A stretch of 64,000 nucleotides of DNA from Zygnema circumcarinatum SAG 698-1b. Its lineage: Eukaryota > Plantae > Zygnematophyceae. Below are positions 38,745 to 61,546 of this stretch, one piece after another (within the stretch, counting starts at the first letter, position 1; every line of letters begins with the position of its first letter). The notes beneath the pieces were generated by a model. It did no database searches. It was given only the letters and a program-made list of their open reading frames with translations, and was not told the origin of the DNA. The position numbers and the translations under genes were made by a program. The stretch is taken from the NCBI GenBank assembly GCA_037447605.1, contig CM074820.1:1984001-2048000 (forward strand), read 5' to 3'.

Positions 38745-40700
<1,956 letters not shown>

Positions 40701-42284: not shown

Positions 42285-45200
42285 CTAGCGATGCGGCACA
42301 TGAGGAGGAGGCGGCAAAGGAGGGCGTGGCGGCATTCGTCCCAACTGCCTCCTGCACGGTTTCCATGTAATTAGGGTTAGATACGAGTTTCACAGAAATT
42401 AGGGTTTGTGAAGTTTGTGAAGTTTGTGAGTGAGAGAGAGGGAGAGATGGACCCCCTCTCAACTCTCAAATACCCGATTTCAGACATCGCGCTCCCCTCA
42501 CTTTTTTTTAGTTTCATTATTTTCTTCAATAGGGCCGATGACAAAGAAATTTGAAAGAGTTTGGGGTTAAGAACCTCAGGGTTTTCAAAGGGATAAAACT
42601 TGAAATCTGACCCGAGAATTCTCGCCTCCACAAGTGCTTGATATTGAAAAGGGATTTCCATCAACGCTCTCAAAGCGAATTGAGACTCCTTTTGCTCCTC
42701 CCCCATTCTTGAATCCATTATTGCAGAAAATTCCACAAACTGCCCAACCCCAGAAAGAATACTTTCAGAAGCTTCAAACTTAAAAACACGTGCTTGGAGA
42801 GCCGAAGAAATTCTTCATCCTGAAACATAGACATATCTCCCTTAGAAAAGAGCCAAAAAAGGTTTAAAAAGCGCAAACACTGCACCTGAAAATTGTCGAA
42901 ATTTCGTTTCGGCAAATTGTCGTCAAATGCATGCATAGCGTCCCACGGTCCATCGCCGACGCCCACCATCACTATGGAGAGGGCGTAGTTGCTGCAGTTC
43001 CGTTAACCGCAACGGAATCAACGTAGGGAGGGAGAGAGAAAGGGGGAGGGAGGGAGGGGGGAGGGGGGGGGGAGGAGGAGGATGGGGAAGGGGATGGGGA
43101 TAGGGAGAGGGAAACGAGAAGGTAGAGCGAGAGAGAGGGAGGAAAGAGCGAGGGAGCGGAGGGAGCGAGGGACGAGCTCTAGAAGGGAGTGAGGGAGAGG
43201 GAGAGGGAGGGGAAGGGCAGAGAAAGGAAGAAGAAGGGAGAGAAAGAGAGGGTGGGAGAGGGAGGAAAAGAGAGGGAGAGGGAGAGAGAGAGAGGTGGAC
43301 AGGGCGGGCAGGGGGAGAGGGATGAGAGAGGTGGGTGCGGACGGAAAGGGGGGGAGAGCGAGAGAGGGAAGGAGAGGACGCGGGAGGGCAGACGAAGGAA
43401 GAGCGGGAGAGGGAGAGAGGGAGGGAGAGGGAGGAGAGTGAAGAGGGAGAGGGAGAGTTGGAGAGGCGGGCAGGGGGGGAGCGACGAGAGAGGTGGGTAG
43501 AGGGAAAGGGAAAGAGAGAAGAAAGCAGAGAGGAAGCAGGAGAACAAGGAACAGAGAGAGAACACAGAGAGGAGAGCACATCATCCAGAGAACACAGGAT
43601 TCGGAGGTAATATGATTTCGAATTTTAGGGTTAAGGTTCAAGGTAGTATGGAAATTCAATCCTCTCGTAATAAGTTGAAAAAAAATTGATGAACAGCATT
43701 TGTAGAATTTCCAAACATCATAAAGTCAAAAAGGAAATCCAAAGGGCACCGTGCCAAATTCAACAAAAACGTAGGTTCAAAATGAAAACTTTGCCGTGCA
43801 AACGAGAAGCAAGAATCAGTACCTCGCTGCCACAATAGCATCGACAGTCGCCTGCTCCTGATCACTTAACCGATTCGGGAGCGTATCACTTGGCCTCGTC
43901 ATCTGAAAAGCAGGCAGAAAAATAAAAATTACAAATTTAAATTTCGTTTACAAACTTCATTCTCCCTTTATTCGTGTATTTGTACGTTTATGTTTACTCG
44001 CTTTAACCGCTCCCCTCCCTAGGGGGGATGAACGACCTGGAGGGGAGGGAGGGGAAGAGGATGGGTTTTTAGGGTTTTAAGGGTTTTTAGGGTAGGCCTG
44101 AAAGGAGGCCCTCCCCTTCTCCCTCCCTTTCCCCTTCCCCCTGCCTTCCACTTACTCCCCTTTCTTCTCCCTTCCTCCCCCTTCCCCTCCCTTCCCTCCC
44201 ACGTCCTCCCCCTTCCCCCCGTTTCCTCCCCCATCTCCCCTCTCTCTCCTCTCCCTCCCCCTCCCCCCTCCCTCTCTCCCTACATCCCTCCCTCCCTCCC
44301 TACCTCCCTCCCTCCAGTGAAAACGAGTTCTCTCACCTCCCCATCTGCAACAATGAGCAGAACGTGGTATTGCCCTCCACTTTGTTCCACAATGCGAACA
44401 GCGGACTCGACAATTGGAGCAAACGAGGTCGGACCTAAAAAAAATAAGCACAAAACCTCCCCTCTCCATATCGCTTTTAAATTTTAAGATTCAGAAAGAC
44501 GTCGGAGGTCAGATTTAACTCGTTTTTTTTTTACATGTGCCCTTAAGTTTTAGGGTATTGGAAGCCTACAAATGTACAGTTTTCGGGTTTTGGAGACAAG
44601 ATTCCAAATAGATAACCAAAAATACAGGTGAACAGCTGATTTTTCCCCTTTCAGACGATAGAGAAGTTCAATAAACGATAATTTATATTTCAGCTTTTAG
44701 GGTTTTCGTTGTCCTGCCTTACACTGACCTGCTAGTCGCACCCTCGGAACAATTTCTTGATAACGATTTAAAGCTCCCGCGAAGCCCCGACATGGAGAGC
44801 CGTCCTCGTTAAAGCTAAACACATACTGGTCCGTCGTAGAAGCTGGCCAAAGGAGCAGCATAGAACACATAACACGTCAAATGGAACTGAATCTGGAACT
44901 GAAACTGGAACTGAAACTGAGCAGACTTTGAGCATATGCACATGTTGGTGCTTTCGGACGCTGCGCCTTGAAGAGGAGAATGCGCAACAATGAAAGCACG
45001 TGTGTGCGGTGTATGTGTGTGAGAAAGAGGGGGAGGGGGGGAGGAGAGAGAGGGAGAGATCATGGAAGAAAAAGGAGGAAGACTGTTAAAGAGCATAACA
45101 GAAAGGAGAGGACAATAAAGTGTGTGAGAGAACGAAAGAGACAAGGGAGGAAGAAGGGGTGAAGGGAGAGAGAGAGAGGGAGACTCAGAGAGAGTCACAA

Positions 45201-46490
45201 AGAGAAGAGTGAGAGAGAGAAAGAAAGGAAAGAGTGAGAGGAGGGAGATGTACGATACTCCTCCTCGCGACTCGAGCAGTTCAATACACTTTTCTCTAAA
45301 CTTGATTTATGTAAAAAGTGCTGCAATTCTACCTCCCTACTTGAACTAAAACACAAAAAGACTAAAAATACAGACGTGAATTGAATTGAAATATGTCCTT
45401 CGATTTACTTTCATTAAGTTTGGCGAAAAGAAAGTGTCAAGGAATCCGAATTTGAGATAAGCTCAAATTCTTCATTGTTGCACTGACCGTCTCCAAATCC
45501 AAAGCATGGAATCAAATTGTCTTCGTCAAAACGTTCGAGAGTTCGACCAATGATGTGCAGCGCCTGCTGGTACGGATTAGGCTGCCGACCAATCGCATGC
45601 AAGCTCTGTTTCCCAAAAGTTCGTTTTCCTGCCCGAAAAAAAACAATTCAATCAAATATACTTCAGAAAAATGGAAAGGGGGAGAAGACTGAAGAAGAAG
45701 CAAGAACAATGCAGTCTGGATCTTTGCATGTGTCTGCGAAAAAAGGAGGCCAGGGTTGAAAATATCAAGTTCAGCTTATAAAAACGTATTTGGCTGAAGA
45801 AATTGGTTTCGAGAAGGTTAAAATTACAAGAAAAGAGCAAGAAGAGAGAAGAAGAGAGAGAGAGAGAAAGACGGAAGTTTGGCAAGAGGAGGGAGACGGA
45901 AAGAGAAGAGGAGTGAGAGGGAGCGAGAAAAGAGAGTGAAAGAGAGAGAAGAGAGAAGAGAGAGAGAAAAGGAGTGGCGAGAGAGGGGTGAGATAGAGAG
46001 TGGGAGAGAGAGGAGAGAGGGAGGGAGGGAAGAGAGTGAGAGGAGAGAGCGGAGAGAGAGGTATATTAAAAACCAGGAGTGAGATTTCCCGTGAATGAGA
46101 CACCTCAAGTTTAAATATTTTCACCGTTCCATGTGTTGCTGGCGGTGAAATCGATTCCAACAATCAAATTGCTCGACTCCAAACCTGCCGCTTGCAGCGC
46201 GCTTGTCACCTGCATGGGAAGGACAAATAAATTTGGCAAATTTGAGAAACAATTATGCACATCATAGGGACATGTTTTCTTTTCTCCGCCGAAATGCTGG
46301 AAGATGTACCCAAGCTTTTTTGGAAACAAGGCATTCTGAGAGTTCGAATAGTTTTTTAAGTTTATAAATTTGATTAAGAAAGGAAAAGAGACAATTTACA
46401 GACCTGATCAATGTTTTGATACAGGTCGGGAATCTGCCCGTAGCGCCGTACAAACCTGTTTCTGAACTCATCATCATCAGCATTCGCCAT
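42285..46490 (-). CDS. RGLG-like vWA/copine protein without RING and without N-terminal Gly2
   Basis: Exons read [29 protein letters not shown]|[22 protein letters not shown]|...IPCFGFGD|...[13 protein letters not shown]|...|[17 protein letters not shown]...NFDNFQ|FVEFS...ALMEIP|[21 protein letters not shown], with TAG at 42285-42287. Confidence 0.85.
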
Positions 46491-55833: not shown

Positions 55834-58800
55834 TTAGCCGTAGAGCTTAATCCGTGCCGTAATCGGTGATCGGCAAATTGGGCAAATACTTAAACTCTTC
55901 CCGCAGTCAACGCAGGTCTGCGCCAAGACCAGAGAGCAGCAGAGAGAGAATCGTCAGGTGATGGACAGACCTTCCGAAAAAAGCCTTCTTGGTAAGAGTG
56001 TGCGTGTATGTGAGAGAGGGGGGGGAGGGGAAACGGGGAGGGCGAGGGGGATGGGCAGGGCGAGGGAGACAGGGAGGGGAAAGGGAAAGGGAGGGGGAGA
56101 GGGAGGAGTAGAGGGAGGGAGAAAGCGAGAAGTAGGGAGAATGAGAAAGAGCGAGGGGGTGAAGTGCGAGAGGGAGGGAAAATTGAGGGGGAGGGGGAGG
56201 GGGAGGGAGAGGGAGAGGAGAGGAGAGAGACGAGAGTGAGAGAGTGGAAGGGAGAAAGCGGGAGAGAATCAAGAGTACGACAGAGAGAGCAAGGAGAGAG
56301 AAGGAGAGGGCGGGATCAGGAGTGTGTGAGAGAGAGAGAGGACCGAGAGAGAAAGGGACAGCGAGAGAGTGAGTATCCATACCTGATGCCCGCATTGGAA
56401 TGCCATGTTCTTCACATTGCTAATGCAGATGGGGCAGAGCCGCGCATCCTCCTGCATGGGCGGAGCCGTGGGAGGGGGCGGCGCGGAGGGGAAGGACTGG
56501 TCGCCGACGGCCGCCATGACGGAGGGAGGGAGAGGGAGAGCCTCTCGGGGAGGCAAGCGGCCCGCGCGGCGACTGCAGGAGAGAGTGGGGAGGGGGGAGG
56601 GCGTCCCATGTGGGAGAGAGGGAGGGAGTTTAGTAAACGGAGTTACGATAAAATGGGGAACAAGGATAGGGTGAGCTGGCGGGAGGAAGGGGGAAGGGGG
56701 GAGGGGGGAGGGGGGAGGGAAGAGGGTGATGAGGGGAGAGGGGAGACGGCGAGGAGAGAGGGGAAAGGGAAGAGAGGAGAGCGGGGGGGGGGTAGAGGGG
56801 ATAAGGGGGGGCGAGACGGAAGAGAAGAGAGGGAGAGGGGAAATTGGTGGGAGGGGAGAGGGGTGGGGTGGGGGGAGGGGGGAAGGGGGGGAAGGGAGGG
56901 AGTGAGTGCGAGAGAGACAGGTCAACGGGAGGTGAAGAGTAATCACTTTCCGCGAGAAAGAGGGAAAGAGAGAGAGGAAGTGAGGGGGTGATGAAGGAAG
57001 AGGAGTAGAGTAGTTACCCGATGTAGCCGAGCTCTTGGCAGGCTTTGAACTGCTCCGGAATCTCCATGAGCGCTGCGAGAGCAAACTGAGCCTCCTTCTT
57101 CTCCTCCGACATTTGCCTCAACATTATCGACGAGAAATCCACAAACTGCACATAACCGTAGAAATCAAAAGAAGCAAACAAATAAATAAAGCAAACTAAA
57201 TTTTGAGTAAAGAAGTCAATAATGAATTAACAAAGTACCATTCGGTGTGAGTGTAACCCGAAACTCAAACCCAGATTAGCGGCTGATGTTCATCCTACTA
57301 ATTGTGAAAAAAAGGCCCAAAACGAAAAAAAAAAAAAAAAAAAAAAAANNNNNNNNNNAAAAAAAAAAAAAAAAAAAAAACAGGAAACAAAGTAAGAATG
57401 GAAACCCCGAATGAAAACAGGCCTGACATTTGTCCAAGAATTGCAAGTAGAAGACTAAATTAACACGATAATAATAAACATTAATAATAATAGGGGGAGT
57501 CAGACATTGACGATGGCCGTACTAAATTCCCAAATTTAGTATACTAAAAGTCAAAGTTTCGTGTACGAATTCCGGGTCGGGATCCGCGCCTCCGCCGAAC
57601 CCAGCCGTACCGAAATGCGTACCTAGCCAATGCTTAATTCGCCCGACAAGCTTACTAATTTTGATTTGGCCATGGTCAATGTCTGACCTCCCCTAATACT
57701 AACAAAAAAAACCCATCAAAGGAAAGGCTTTCAGTTTCAGTTACCTGAAAATTGTCGAAATTTCGGTTCGGAATATTGTCATCAAAAGTCCGCATTGTAT
57801 CCCACGGCCCGTCGCCCACCCCCACCATCACTATGGATAAGGCATAGTTGCTGAATAAAACGGAGAAAGAAACGGAAAGAGAACACAGAAACCCAACCCC
57901 AAAAAAAGACCAGCTTTGAAATGAAGATGGAGGGGGTCTTCATTGTGTACAAAAAAAACCCAAAAAAATCAAACCTGAAAATTGTCGAAATTCCGTCCCC
58001 TCAAAAGGTTGTCAAAGTGCAGCATGGCATCCCAGGGCCCATCTCCCACCCCCACCAGCACGATAGAGAGGGCGTAATTGCTGCAAAAAAATTACCAAAC
58101 TGGACCCTAAAATACCGAACAACTTTTTACCAAACAAACAAACAAACGACCTTAGATACATCATTTTGATGTCAGGAAGGAACAAAAGGAAAAAATAAGG
58201 CCGGCTTTATAGTGTAAGGTTCAGGGTCTAGGGTTCAGTGTTTAGAGGTTAGGGTTAGATTGTAAGGTTTTACCTCGCCGCTGTGATGGCATCTACAGTC
58301 GCTTTCTCTTGAGGACTTAACACTCCCGGTGCCATATCTGAACTCCTCGTCACCTGCAAAAAAAAAAAAATTGCAAATATCGAAAAAAATGGTAAATACT
58401 TAACTTCTTCATAAAGCAGCGCGAAACAAAGGCCAGCTTTTTCCTTCTACCTCCTCCTTCTTCGCTCCCGTACTTCTCCATCCTAACCTCCATCCCTCCC
58501 TCCCCTTCCCTCCCGGTCTCTCCCGCTCTCCTCCTCGCGCTTCCTCACTCTCTACCCCTCCCTCTTATACCTCCACCTCTCTCTCCCTCCCCCCTGTCTC
58601 GCGCTTCTCACTCTTTTCCCTTCCCTCTCCTCTATCAAGTCCCCATCTCCCTCCTGCCTCCCTCCCTGTCTCCTTTCCCTGTCCCTCTCTCCCTCCCTTC
58701 TCCATCTCGCTCCCCTTCCCACCACGCTCTCTTCCCCCAAACTCCCTCCTCTTCCTCTCCCTTCCCCCTCCCTCTTTTTCCCTCGCCCCCTCCCCTTCAC

Positions 58801-59730
58801 CCACTCCCTCCCCCCTCCCGCTCTTTCCATCTCCCTCCCTTGCCCTCCACCCTCGCTCCCCCCCGCCTCCCCTCTCCCTCCTCCCGTCCCTCTCTCCCCC
58901 CGCCCTCCCTTTTCTTCCCCCCCCTCGCCCTTCCTCGCCGCCTCCCCTCTCACTTCCCTCGAAAACCTTCCTCCCCTTCCCCTTCCCCGCTCCCGTCCCT
59001 TCCCCCTCTCCCCCTCTCCCTCACTCTCTCCTCCCCATCTCCCACTCTCTGTCCCCTTCCCCCTCCCTCTCTTCCGTCTCCCGCTCTTTCTCCTTCCCCT
59101 CCCCCTCCCCCTCCCGCTCTTACTCCTCCCCCACTTCTCTCCCCTCCCTCCCATTCCACCTCTCAGGCTCCCTCACACTCTCCTCCCCCCCCTCTGTCTC
59201 CCTCCTCCCCCCTCCCCTCTCCTCCCTTCCCCCTCCCTTTCCCTCCTTCACGTCTCTCACCTGTCCATCTGCAATGATGAGCAGCACATGATACATTCCG
59301 CCGCTCTGCTCCACAATGCGAACTGCCGCCTCCACAATTGGCGCAAAGGATGTGGGCCCTGCAAAATACGAAAATAACAAAAAAAGAAAATACAAATATG
59401 TCAGAGAAACTAATTAGATCGAATTAGACAGTAACTGAACTGACAAAAGACAGACCCACCCTTTGTTAACTAATCGGTTGAGAGTGTGAGGGAGTAGACC
59501 TGCCGCTTGAATAACATTTTTAGTCAACATGGAAAAGTTAGCAATCTAGGCATTATTTCAATAACAAACGACAGTTTAGGCAAAAAAACAAACAATACCT
59601 GCAAGTCGCACGTGCGGAGCGATTTGTCGATATCGATACAACGCTTCATTGAACCCATTGCAGGGCCGCCCGCCATTATAAAAGTGAAACGAATACTGAT
59701 CATGTGTTGTGACTGTAAGAGAGACAGAGG

Positions 59731-59763
<33 letters not shown>

Positions 59764-61546
59764 GCCGAGGGAGCAGAAAACCACACCAGAATACAATAAA
59801 TCATTACAACCTCAGAAATGAGAAACCTTAAAGCCCCCCCCCCCCCCCCCNNNNNNNNNNCCCCCCCCCCCCCCCCACAAAAAATCCTAGAAACAGATAT
59901 CGTAATCCGTAATATCGTAATCGTAATTATATATTAGTAATAGCTTCAGTAAAGAAGAATTTCAGGAGACCAAACCCTAACGTTACACTTCAACCTGCAC
60001 TCTACTTTTTCAGCTTCAAATTTTCCTTACCATCTCCAAAGCCGAAGCAGGGAATGAGCTGGTCATCATCAAAGGAAGAGAGGGTTCTTCCGATGATGCT
60101 GATGGCCTGCTCGTACGGATTTGGGACACTGGAAATTGCGTGGAGGCTTTTCCCTCCAAATGTGCGCTTTCCTGTAAATAAAAAAGGGGAAGGAATAAAA
60201 TTAAAGAGAAACAAATGAAATTAGGTGAAGGTTAGGAGGGGAAAAGGAAGGGAGGAGAGGAAGGAGAAGAGAGAAGACGGGGCGGAGAGGAGAAAAAGGA
60301 GGAAGGGGGGGAGGAAGGAGAAGGGGAAAGGAAGGGAGAAGGAGGTGGGAGGAGGGGAAATGCGGGAAGTGGGAGGGGAGCAGGGGTGGGGGTGAGGAGG
60401 TGGTGGAGATGAGAAGGTAGGAGGAAGGACGAGGAGAGAGGAGGATAAGTGGAGGAAGGAGACACTGAAAAACAAAATCAACTATGCTGTAATCATGTTG
60501 CAGCATTTCTATGATTTGTTGTACAGAAACATACCGCTCCATTCGTTGCTCTTTGTAAAGTCTATTCCAACAATGAGATTGCTTGATTCAAGTCCTGCAC
60601 TTCGAAGAGCATCTTGCACCTGCAAGACAGAATTATGGTTACTTAACTAAGGAGGGCTATTAGACTTGGACTTGGATTGGAAAAGGGAAAGGTAGATTCA
60701 GGCCTCGCAAAAAGTTAGAAACTAAGGTGATTGAAAGGACTGAGTTGAAAAAAATTATGTTCAGAAAGAAGGCAAGGCATACTGTTGCAAGAAGACAACA
60801 ATAGGAAATAAGGAAATATGAACCTCCTTCGCCATCGAAAGCACTACTGCATAATCGTTCAAAAGAAAGTGCAGAAATTGATGATAAAATATTAAACAAC
60901 AGAGTGAGAACATAGTACGATAAAGAAATTTGAAAATATGGCACTTTCTGGAATCTGAAGGAGCGCTTTAACTCTCAGAATTTGCATAAAAGAATTCGGA
61001 ATGCGTAACAGCATAAACTCTTCGAGTTTTAGCAAAAGTCAGGGGTAGGCTAAGTGTCGGGGGTTAAAAAATTAACTCATGGTTTTCACTTGAGTCAAGA
61101 GCAAACATTAGAATCAAGAAAAAGGTTAGGCTTGAAGGAATCAGGTTTAGGGTCAAGGCTAGGGTTATGCTCGAGGGTAGAGTTAAGGTACGAATGAAGT
61201 AAGAGCTTCCATTTGGCTTAGAGTTCAAGTTGGTCGAGGTTAGGACTAGGGCTAGGGCTAGGGCTAGGGCTAGGATTAGGCTAAGAACTAGGGCTACGGC
61301 GAGGGTTAGGGTTAGGGTTAGGGTTACGGTTGACGTTAGGGTTAGGGTTGAGGGCGGTGCCTGGTCGAGGGTGGAGAAGCTGTCGGGGATGAAGTCGTAC
61401 TTCCGCGCGAAGCGCTGCGTGAGGCTGCCGGCCGGCGCCTGCAGCGAGGACCGCGGGGGCCCGGAGGGGCGCGCGGTCGGGGTAGAGCTGCTGCTGCCCA
61501 TGGGAGGAAGGGTGGGAGGGAGGGAGGAGGAACTGCTGTTGCCCAT
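55834..61546 (-). CDS. RGLG: RGLG E3 ubiquitin ligase (N-myristoylation motif, vWA/copine domain, C-terminal RING)
   Basis: MGNSSS start at 61546; [19 protein letters not shown]; IPCFGFGD; [12 protein letters not shown]; VGVGDGPWD; [18 protein letters not shown]|[27 protein letters not shown], with TAA at 55834-55836. Confidence 0.95.
57493..57693 (-). mobile_element. Tourist-like MITE, copy 2, in an RGLG intron
   Basis: TIRs GGGGGAGTCAGACATTGACGATGGCC / GGCCATGGTCAATGTCTGACCTCCCC. The interior matches 10012-10192. Flanks ATA/TAA. Confidence 0.8.
61190..61350 (+). repeat. Telomere-like (TTAGGG/CTAGGG)n array at the start of RGLG intron 1
   Basis: Visible TAGGGC/TAGGGT runs. Confidence 0.8.

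What the first reader, a model, noticed from the sequence alone, without database searches (positions are those of the whole stretch)
57745..58080. Tandem duplicated 106-nt exons in RGLG: candidate mutually exclusive splicing
Seen in sequence: two homologous exons, 58080-57975 ([35 protein letters not shown]) and 57850-57745 ([35 protein letters not shown]). Each has a CAG acceptor, a GT donor, identical phases (2 in, 0 out) and identical length, separated by a 124-nt intron. Since 106 is not divisible by 3, including both or neither shifts the frame. Both copies stay open and keep the VGVGDGPWD motif while diverging in the helix after it. Established: duplication-derived mutually exclusive exons are common in animals but rare in plants. 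Inference: two vWA-domain isoforms of an E3 ligase that may differ in substrate binding.
Basis: partly seen in the sequence, partly recalled or inferred. Interest (0 to 1): 0.82.

Follow-up and report, generated by a model that had tools for sequence, protein, structure and literature searches.

The report
Mutually exclusive exons in RGLG ligase
An algal relative of land plants makes two versions of an RGLG ubiquitin ligase by splicing in one or the other of two duplicated 106-base exons, which swaps the helix that acts as the protein's calcium-controlled switch; checked examples of this kind of splicing are rare in the plant lineage.

Summary

**The exons.** Two homologous 106-nt exons lie on the minus strand: 7a at 58080-57975 and 7b at 57850-57745. 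They sit in a 10-exon RGLG gene (copine-type vWA domain plus RING). Either exon alone gives an open 403-aa frame. Both together, or neither, shift the frame and give early stops.

**RNA evidence.** Assembled RNA contigs from four independent studies contain both e6-7a-e8 and e6-7b-e8. No 7a-7b joint and no e6-e8 joint was listed. The 7a share is about 31%, 32%, 54% and 74% in the four runs. The 7a and 7b depths together are of the same order as the flanking exons.

**Conservation.** The same pair, in the same order and at the same length, with AG/GT sites, occurs in two other organisms known only from metagenome contigs. The three 7a exons form a clade (support 100/97). The window's own paralog and two Closterium orthologs have no 7a.

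**Structure.** The exon encodes a β-strand, relay residue W331, helix α7 and four of the five ligand positions of the allosteric Ca2+ site NCBS1 of Arabidopsis RGLG1. Exon 7a keeps the ligands but changes two otherwise invariant neighbours, D339N and P342R.

**Limits.** Exclusivity is probably enforced by frameshift and NMD; I found no RNA-structure signal. The functional difference between the isoforms is inferred. This is a new member of a known kind.

The parts
55834..61546 (-). RGLG-type E3 ligase gene, start codon to stop codon. It has 10 coding exons per transcript and 11 exon bodies counting both 7a and 7b.
   Evidence: Exon model built by homology and splice sites. The protein is 66.7% identical over 381 aligned residues to Mesotaenium RGLG P0174, which carries PF07002 and PF13920. 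Only e6 to e8 is confirmed by RNA.
58274..58353 (-). Constitutive exon 6 (80 nt). It ends with two bases of a Ser codon.
   Evidence: RNA contigs cover it in all four runs and join it to both 7a and 7b.
58081..58273 (-). Intron 6 (193 nt, GT..AG)
   Evidence: Joint 58274/58080 in four runs; zero depth inside the intron.
57975..58080 (-). Exon 7a (106 nt), the divergent copy, with the signature FDNLLRGR
   Evidence: A 145-nt RNA contig reads e6(27 nt)-7a-e8(12 nt) with 0 mismatches in X1 and X11; X10 and X15 have shorter 7a contigs of the same kind. Depths are 55, 109.6, 12.2 and 579.3.
57996..58028 (-). Codons 18-28 of 7a, the variable segment: exposed turns of helix α7 plus the loop after it (RGLG1 residues 333-343)
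   Evidence: Codon table. Mapping to RGLG1 and PMC7155146. Helix and loop limits from the model of the Mesotaenium homolog.
57851..57974 (-). Intron between 7a and 7b (124 nt, GT..AG)
   Evidence: Only low-depth coverage in two runs, consistent with pre-mRNA. No joint removing just this intron was listed.
57745..57850 (-). Exon 7b (106 nt), the canonical copy, with FDDNIPNR
   Evidence: A 145-nt RNA contig reads e6-7b-e8 in X1 and X15; X10 and X11 have 120-nt 7b contigs. Depths are 124.7, 237, 4.2 and 491.7.
57766..57798 (-). Codons 18-28 of 7b, the variable segment in its canonical form
57146..57744 (-). Intron 7b-8 (599 nt). It holds an assembly gap of 10 N and a MITE-like insert.
57018..57145 (-). 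Constitutive exon 8 (128 nt). It carries the fifth NCBS1 ligand, E378 of RGLG1, in the LMEIP motif.
   Evidence: RNA contigs. Alignment to RGLG1, RGLG2 and RGLG5 chains.

Best explanation
Exons 7a and 7b are a tandem-duplicated pair of mutually exclusive exons in an RGLG-type E3 ubiquitin ligase of a streptophyte alga.

Shown: every mature transcript seen carries exactly one of the two, giving two 403-aa isoforms that differ at 9 of 35 residues. Both isoforms are abundant and their ratio differs between data sets. The duplication is old (dS about 1) and predates the split from two other organisms that keep the same pair. Both copies are under purifying selection.

Shown by homology to solved RGLG1 structures: the exon encodes a β-strand, the DGPW loop (W331), helix α7 and the Ca2+ ligand positions D338, D347, F349 and Q350 of the allosteric site NCBS1.

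Inferred: 7b gives the canonical switch. Exon 7a keeps all ligands but replaces the invariant D339 and P342 with N and R. This removes a negative charge and adds a positive one beside the two-Ca2+ site, so the 7a isoform should have a different Ca2+ threshold, a different open/closed balance of the vWA domain, or a different local surface.

Inferred: exclusivity is enforced mainly by reading frame. Because 106 is not divisible by 3, double inclusion or double skipping creates early stops upstream of further exon junctions, which would be removed by nonsense-mediated decay.
For: - **Splicing.**: joints 58274/58080 and 58274/57850 appear in all four runs, which come from four studies. Each exon has its own bubble contig containing 27 nt of e6, the whole exon and 12 nt of e8. 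Loose ends at 57975 and 57745 both read the start of e8. No 7a-7b joint and no e6-e8 joint is listed.
- **Depths.** Summed 7a + 7b depth against e6 depth is 180 vs 183, 347 vs 265, 16 vs 22 and 1071 vs 830.
- **Frame.** One search shows the consequences of including both or neither.
- **Selection.**: dN/dS is 0.20 at dS of about 1. In the first 17 codons dN is 0.05 and dS is 1.4.
- **Conservation.**: the same pair, 106 nt each with AG/GT sites, occurs in L001 and L002; the 7a exons form a clade at 100/97, and a tree with the window's 7a and 7b as sisters is rejected (p-AU 0.02).
- **Structure.** with PMC7155146 give the residue mapping. One search gives strand 247-252, helix 258-266 and loop 267-275 in the Mesotaenium model.
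- **Invariant residues.**: D339 and P342 are invariant in 30 diverse RGLGs; both are absent in only 6 of 272 unique homologous segments.
Against: - The RNA evidence is assembled contigs, not reads. Rare forms (both exons, neither exon) may have been dropped, and word depth is a rough measure of abundance.
- Run types were guessed. I infer RNA from the absence of intron coverage.
- Run conditions are unknown, so the varying ratio could reflect strain or library differences rather than regulation.
- No protein-level evidence exists for either isoform.
- No structure of a 7a-type domain was predicted or solved, so the Ca2+ argument rests on charge and conservation only.
- 7a evolves faster than 7b between L001 and L002 (dN/dS 0.32 vs 0.08), and L002's 7a has lost F337 and F349. 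That is compatible with relaxed constraint in some lineages.
Confidence: 0.85

Rival explanations
1. Exon 7a is a decaying duplicate whose inclusion is splicing noise. Only the 7b isoform is functional.
For: 7a departs from residues that are otherwise invariant in the family. It evolves faster than 7b between L001 and L002. Annotated RGLGs of other streptophytes all carry the 7b type.
Against: 7a makes up about 31-74% of transcripts in four studies. It has stayed open, 106 nt long and flanked by AG/GT in three organisms at dS of about 1. Its first 17 codons have dN 0.05 against dS 1.4. All Ca2+ ligand positions are kept in the window and in L001.
Confidence: 0.07
2. The two transcript forms come from two different loci, or from an assembly artefact such as collapsed or duplicated haplotypes, and not from alternative splicing of one gene.
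For: Contigs are short, so each one links only 27 nt of e6 and 12 nt of e8 to the alternative exon. A paralog exists 9 kb away.
Against: The two exons differ at 28 of 105 in-frame positions, far too much for haplotypes. Both contigs match this locus with 0 mismatches. The paralog's exon and flanks differ in sequence. 7a and 7b depths together are of the same order as the shared flanking exons. The same tandem layout is found on single contigs of two other organisms.
Confidence: 0.03
3. Exclusivity is set during splicing by competing RNA structures (a docking site and selector sequences, as in Dscam, 14-3-3ξ or ATE1) or by steric hindrance, and not by frameshift plus NMD.
For: No 7a-7b joint was seen even at a 2% threshold. 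A U-rich motif (GGGUUUUUUUUGU-like) lies downstream of both donors (family D5). The intron between the exons is rich in GGGTTT-type repeats in all three organisms.
Against: Duplex energies between intron and exon segments are within about 2.7 SD of shuffled controls, and the strongest stabilising z is -2.3, from only 20 shuffles. The only inverted repeats in the region are a MITE and short 11-16-nt matches. The intron between the exons is 124, 148 and 229 nt in the three organisms, long enough to be spliced. Both donors are ordinary GT sites, with no sign of U12-type signals.
Confidence: 0.15

Closest known systems
Homologous mutually exclusive exon pairs from tandem exon duplication whose length is not a multiple of three (e.g. 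mammalian FGFR2 IIIb/IIIc; ATE1 exons 7a/7b, PMC7797038)
   Same: Adjacent homologous exons of equal length and phase, with exactly one included. The swap replaces one structural element of a folded domain. Including both or neither breaks the frame.
   Different: This is a plant-lineage alga. No regulatory RNA structure or splicing factor has been identified here. NMD dependence has not been tested.
Arabidopsis RGLG1/RGLG2/RGLG5 (vWA + RING E3 ligases; PDB 6K82-6K8B, 8HMG, 8XT5; PMC7155146)
   Same: Same domain order: an N-terminal Met-Gly start (MGNSSS), a copine-type vWA domain with a DxTxS MIDAS motif, and a C-terminal RING. The residues of the NCBS1 Ca2+ site and W331 are conserved. Exon 7b is 29/35 identical to the corresponding RGLG5 residues aligned.
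   Different: The library held no report of alternative α7 exons in Arabidopsis RGLGs. The 7a isoform carries N and R in place of the invariant D339 and P342.
Reported plant MXE cases (predicted Arabidopsis candidates in Kassiopeia, PMC3923563; Picea abies DAL19 MADS-box, PMC6243048)
   Same: Mutually exclusive choice of exons in a member of the green lineage.
   Different: The Kassiopeia Arabidopsis set is prediction only, and that paper notes that no MXE genes had been described for Arabidopsis at the time. Here the pair is internal, homologous, supported by RNA in four studies and conserved across three organisms.

Membership tests
Mutually exclusive exons derived from tandem exon duplication | Neighbouring exons are homologous, with the same length and intron phases | tested here: met
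   Each is 106 nt, with phase 2 in and phase 0 out. Identity is 77/105 nt and 26/35 aa.
Mutually exclusive exons derived from tandem exon duplication | Each exon is spliced directly to both constitutive neighbours (e6-7a-e8 and e6-7b-e8) | tested here: met
   Bubble contigs and joints in four runs from four studies.
Mutually exclusive exons derived from tandem exon duplication | Transcripts with both exons or with neither are absent or rare | tested here: inconclusive
   No 7a-7b or e6-e8 joint was listed at a 2% threshold, and 7a + 7b depth is of the same order as the flanking exons. However, contigs drop rare variants and raw reads were not available.
Mutually exclusive exons derived from tandem exon duplication | Both copies are maintained by selection or conserved in other species | tested here: met
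   dN/dS 0.20 at dS of about 1. The pair is present in L001 and L002 with splice sites intact. The 7a exons form a clade at 100/97.
RGLG-type E3 ubiquitin ligase | Copine-type vWA domain with a MIDAS motif | tested here: met
   Exons 7 and 8 hit RGLG1, RGLG2 and RGLG5 chains at E 1e-13 to 1e-8. The protein is 66.7% identical to Mesotaenium RGLG, which carries PF07002. DFTKS is present in exon 2.
RGLG-type E3 ubiquitin ligase | C-terminal RING finger | tested here: met
   A Cys/His pattern CPIC..C.H..C..C..CPIC is read in exons 9 and 10. It aligns to the PF13920-bearing C-termini of homologs.
RGLG-type E3 ubiquitin ligase | E3 ligase activity and N-myristoylation | not testable with these tools
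   Only the MGNSSS N-terminus is seen.
RNA-structure-controlled MXE clusters (docking site and selector) | Conserved complementary intronic elements that compete for pairing | tested here: not met
   No duplex stands out from shuffled controls. No suitable inverted repeats were found. The test is weak: one species, few shuffles.
Steric-hindrance MXE (α-tropomyosin type) | The intron between the exons is too short to be spliced | tested here: not met
   The intron is 124 nt here, 229 nt in L001 and 148 nt in L002.
Frame- and NMD-enforced MXE | Exon length is not a multiple of 3, so double inclusion or double skipping gives a premature stop upstream of later exon junctions | tested here: met
   with both exons, the stops fall inside 7b. 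With neither, the stop falls early in e8. Two or three junctions remain downstream in each case.
Frame- and NMD-enforced MXE | The aberrant forms accumulate when NMD is blocked | not testable with these tools
   Needs an experiment.

The most novel reading that the evidence does not exclude
The exon choice is a regulated, ancient switch that sets the Ca2+ threshold of the RGLG vWA allosteric helix. One gene would then yield a Ca2+-responsive ligase and a differently tuned or Ca2+-independent ligase. This would be one of the first RNA-supported, cross-species-conserved homologous MXE pairs with a defined structural role in the lineage leading to land plants.
Probability: 0.25. Interest if true: 0.8.

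Novelty: new member of a known kind. Interest (0 to 1): 0.62.

Why it matters
Well-supported homologous mutually exclusive exons are common in animals but hardly documented in plants and their algal relatives. The Kassiopeia paper of 2014 could list only predictions for Arabidopsis.

This pair has RNA support from four studies and is conserved in three organisms. It replaces helix α7 and its flank, the element that crystal structures of Arabidopsis RGLG1 identify as the Ca2+-driven switch between the open and closed vWA states (PMC7155146).

Two consequences follow. It is a natural experiment on how that switch can be retuned. It also suggests that RGLG output in this alga can be altered after transcription rather than by keeping extra gene copies.

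RGLGs act in ABA, drought, jasmonate and receptor-turnover pathways in land plants. An isoform switch in an algal relative is therefore relevant to how these pathways were regulated before land plants arose.

Tried and rejected
1. **Own protein and species name.** A profile search seeded with window exons, a search with a Closterium homolog and an exact look-up of the neighbouring NKAP ORF did not return the window's own proteins. Placement as a streptophyte alga rests on best identity to Mesotaenium, a gene tree and shared NKAP-RGLG adjacency.
2. **More organisms with the pair.** A scan of metagenome contigs gave 80 loci with a single exon copy each. Two Closterium look-ups found nothing on record. 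Two others gave loci with only truncated repeats of the exon's 5' part and no 7a-type exon.
3. **RNA structure.** Duplex folding with shuffled controls (a first attempt, timed out) and repeat search gave no convincing docking or selector pair.
4. **Aligning all window exons to a homolog.** MAFFT scattered the short pieces, so a subset was used.
5. **Isoform structures.** A model of the Mesotaenium homolog served for the secondary-structure limits.
6. **Steric hindrance and U12/U2 incompatibility.** Both were considered and rejected on intron length and donor sequences.

Full report
**1. Observation**

On the minus strand, exon 7a (58080-57975) and exon 7b (57850-57745) are each 106 nt.
- Each is preceded by a pyrimidine tract and CAG, and followed by GT.
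- They are separated by a 124-nt intron.
- The in-frame 105 nt are 77/105 identical, and 26 of 35 residues are identical.
- The repeat finder lists the pair as a 118-nt direct repeat at 75% identity.
- The flanking intron sequence is unalignable.

I built the gene model from homology and splice sites. It has ten coding exons, from the ATG at 61546 to the stop at 55834.
- With either 7a or 7b, the coding sequence is 1212 nt and the protein is 403 aa.
- With both exons the frame shifts and two stops fall inside 7b.
- With neither exon a stop falls early in exon 8.

**2. What the gene is**

The protein starts MGNSSS. It has the DFTKS MIDAS motif, a copine-type vWA domain and a C-terminal RING.
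- Exons 7 and 8 hit solved chains of Arabidopsis RGLG5, RGLG2 and RGLG1.
- The whole protein is 66.7% identical to an RGLG of Mesotaenium endlicherianum that carries PF07002 and PF13920.
- In a gene tree it sits among streptophyte-algal sequences, outside the land-plant clade.
- The neighbouring NKAP gene (39039-40697) and RGLG are also adjacent gene models in Mesotaenium (ME000407S06939 and 06940).

The organism could not be named, because its own proteins are not in the searched collections. I describe it as a streptophyte alga, possibly a zygnematophyte. This placement is inferred.

**3. RNA evidence**

Two run searches listed RNA-like runs of the same organism. I laid Logan contigs of four runs from four different studies on 56950-58420.
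- Introns have zero or near-zero depth and exons are covered, so the material is RNA.
- In every run there is a joint from 58274 (end of e6) to 58080 (start of 7a), and another from 58274 to 57850 (start of 7b). Both have GT..AG ends.
- Each alternative exon sits in its own short contig. The fullest of these are 145 nt: 27 nt of e6, the whole 106-nt exon and 12 nt of e8, with no mismatches.
- The loose ends at 57975 and 57745 both read the first 12 bases of e8.

This is what a de Bruijn assembler produces for two alternative paths between shared flanks. It shows both e6-7a-e8 and e6-7b-e8.

No joint removing only the 124-nt intron (7a-7b) and no e6-e8 joint was listed at a 2% threshold.

| Run | 7a depth | 7b depth | 7a share | 7a + 7b | e6 depth |
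|---|---|---|---|---|---|
| X1 | 55 | 125 | about 31% | 180 | 183 |
| X10 | 110 | 237 | about 32% | 347 | 265 |
| X11 | 12.2 | 4.2 | about 74% | 16 | 22 |
| X15 | 579 | 492 | about 54% | 1071 | 830 |

The sums are of the same order as the e6 depth, as expected if each transcript has one exon or the other.

Caveats:
- Contigs drop rare variants.
- Word depth is a coarse measure.
- Sample conditions are hidden from me.

**4. Conservation**

A search of 1.84 billion representative proteins with the 7a peptide returned one short ORF (P0005) with the 7a signature.
- **L001.** The contig carrying P0005, from an ENA metagenome assembly, has a 7a-type exon at 87-192 and a 7b-type exon at 422-527.
- **L002.** A second metagenome contig has exons 5 and 6 fused, then a 7a-type exon at 936-1041 and a 7b-type exon at 1190-1295.
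- All four exons are 106 nt with AG and GT. The intervening introns are 229 and 148 nt.

The three 7a exons share L/F at position 8, N at 24, L/V at 25 and R at 27, against M, D, N and P in 7b and elsewhere.
- In a tree of the 35-residue segment with nine outgroups, the three 7a exons form a clade with support 100/97.
- A tree that holds the window's 7a and 7b together is rejected (p-AU 0.02).

The duplication therefore predates the divergence of these organisms.

Selection:
- 7a against 7b in the window: dN/dS 0.20 at dS of about 1.
- First 17 codons: dN 0.05, dS 1.4.
- Variable 12 codons: dN 0.75, dS 1.17.
- L001 against L002: 7a has dN/dS 0.32 and 7b has 0.08.

Both copies are constrained, 7a less so. 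Counts are small.

The pair is not general:
- The window's own paralog (42.6-46.2 kb) has one 7b-like exon.
- Eighty other metagenome loci have one copy each.
- Two Closterium orthologs have only truncated repeats of the exon's first 15-20 codons.

**5. What the swap changes**

I aligned the exons to the RGLG1 chains. The numbering comes from the crystal-structure paper PMC7155146. On that numbering the exon ends at Q350 and contains:
- W331, the relay residue;
- D338, in helix α7;
- D347, F349 and Q350.

That is four of the five ligand positions of the two-Ca2+ site NCBS1. The fifth, E378, lies in constitutive exon 8.

In RGLG1, loss of Ca2+ from NCBS1 swings α7 by 22 degrees and converts the domain from the open state to the closed state. 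This is the paper's result.

An AlphaFold model of the Mesotaenium homolog gives these limits for the exon:
- strand 247-252;
- helix 258-266;
- loop 267-275;
- the start of the next strand.

The 7a/7b differences fall on helix positions 18, 20 and 21, the helix end (24) and the following loop (25-28).

Exon 7a keeps every ligand in the window and in L001. It replaces D339 with N and P342 with R.
- Both residues are invariant in 30 diverse streptophyte RGLGs.
- Both are missing together in only 6 of 272 unique homologous segments.

My inference is that the 7a isoform has an altered Ca2+ response or a different open/closed balance, and possibly a different local surface. This was not tested.

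**6. How exclusivity is kept**

- The intron between the exons is long enough to splice in all three organisms.
- The donors are ordinary GT sites.
- Duplex folding with shuffled controls and repeat searches gave no convincing competing RNA structure.
- Exon length is not a multiple of three, and the aberrant forms carry early stops with exon junctions downstream.

The simplest mechanism is competition between the two exons' splice sites, with nonsense-mediated decay removing the products that carry both or neither. NMD dependence is untested.

**7. Comparison and novelty**

This is the known class of tandem-duplication-derived mutually exclusive exons. In its reading-frame logic it resembles FGFR2 IIIb/IIIc or ATE1 7a/7b.
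- I found no paper reporting such exons in RGLG genes.
- The Kassiopeia paper shows that plant MXEs were, at the time, predictions without description.

I rate it a new member of a known kind. It is unusual for its lineage and for the clear structural role of the swapped element.

Other first-stage notes flag further MXE candidates in the same genome. I did not test them.

**8. Verdict**

- Mutually exclusive splicing is supported, with confidence of about 0.85-0.9.
- The functional difference between the isoforms is plausible but only inferred.

Noticed in passing
window 57485-57701 (inside intron 7b-8): A MITE-like insert with 34-nt terminal inverted repeats, 85% complementary and 149 nt apart. 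RNA contigs covering it have high depth and many variant letters, so it is a multi-copy element transcribed elsewhere in the genome.
   Followed up: partly
window 42611-46239, minus strand: An RGLG paralog with a single 7b-like copy of the exon (42993-42886).
   Followed up: partly
window 39039-40697 (+) and the RGLG genes: An intronless NKAP-family ORF (Pfam Nkap_C) lies next to the RGLG genes. In Mesotaenium the NKAP and RGLG homologs carry consecutive gene-model numbers on one scaffold (ME000407S06939 and 06940), which suggests conserved microsynteny.
   Followed up: partly
window 61355-61361: By homology, exon 1 ends at CAG followed by GCACCG, so intron 1 would be a GC-AG intron. No RNA was laid there.
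   Followed up: no
window 57975-57993, 57745-57763, 42886-42904: The last 19 nt of 7a, 7b and the paralog's exon are identical at the nucleotide level although dS elsewhere is about 1. L001 and L002 show synonymous differences there. Local gene conversion or a splicing signal are possible explanations.
   Followed up: partly
L083:8578-8907 and L084:6496-7002 (Closterium RGLG genes): These Closterium RGLG genes hold short tandem arrays of truncated exon-plus-intron fragments at many exon borders, for example two to three partial copies of the first 15-20 codons of the exon-7 equivalent at 110-133-nt spacing. One public gene model (P0010) reads through such repeats.
   Followed up: no
L002:249-439: In this relative, exons 5 and 6 are one continuous exon. 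The intron that is about 900 nt and polypurine-rich in the window is absent.
   Followed up: no
window 58420-59260, 56000-56360, 56600-56960, 60230-60460; N runs at 57349-57358 and 59851-59860: The introns of this gene consist largely of polypurine or polypyrimidine low-complexity tracts and telomere-like CCCTAA-type repeats. Two 10-N assembly gaps sit inside homopolymers.
   Followed up: no
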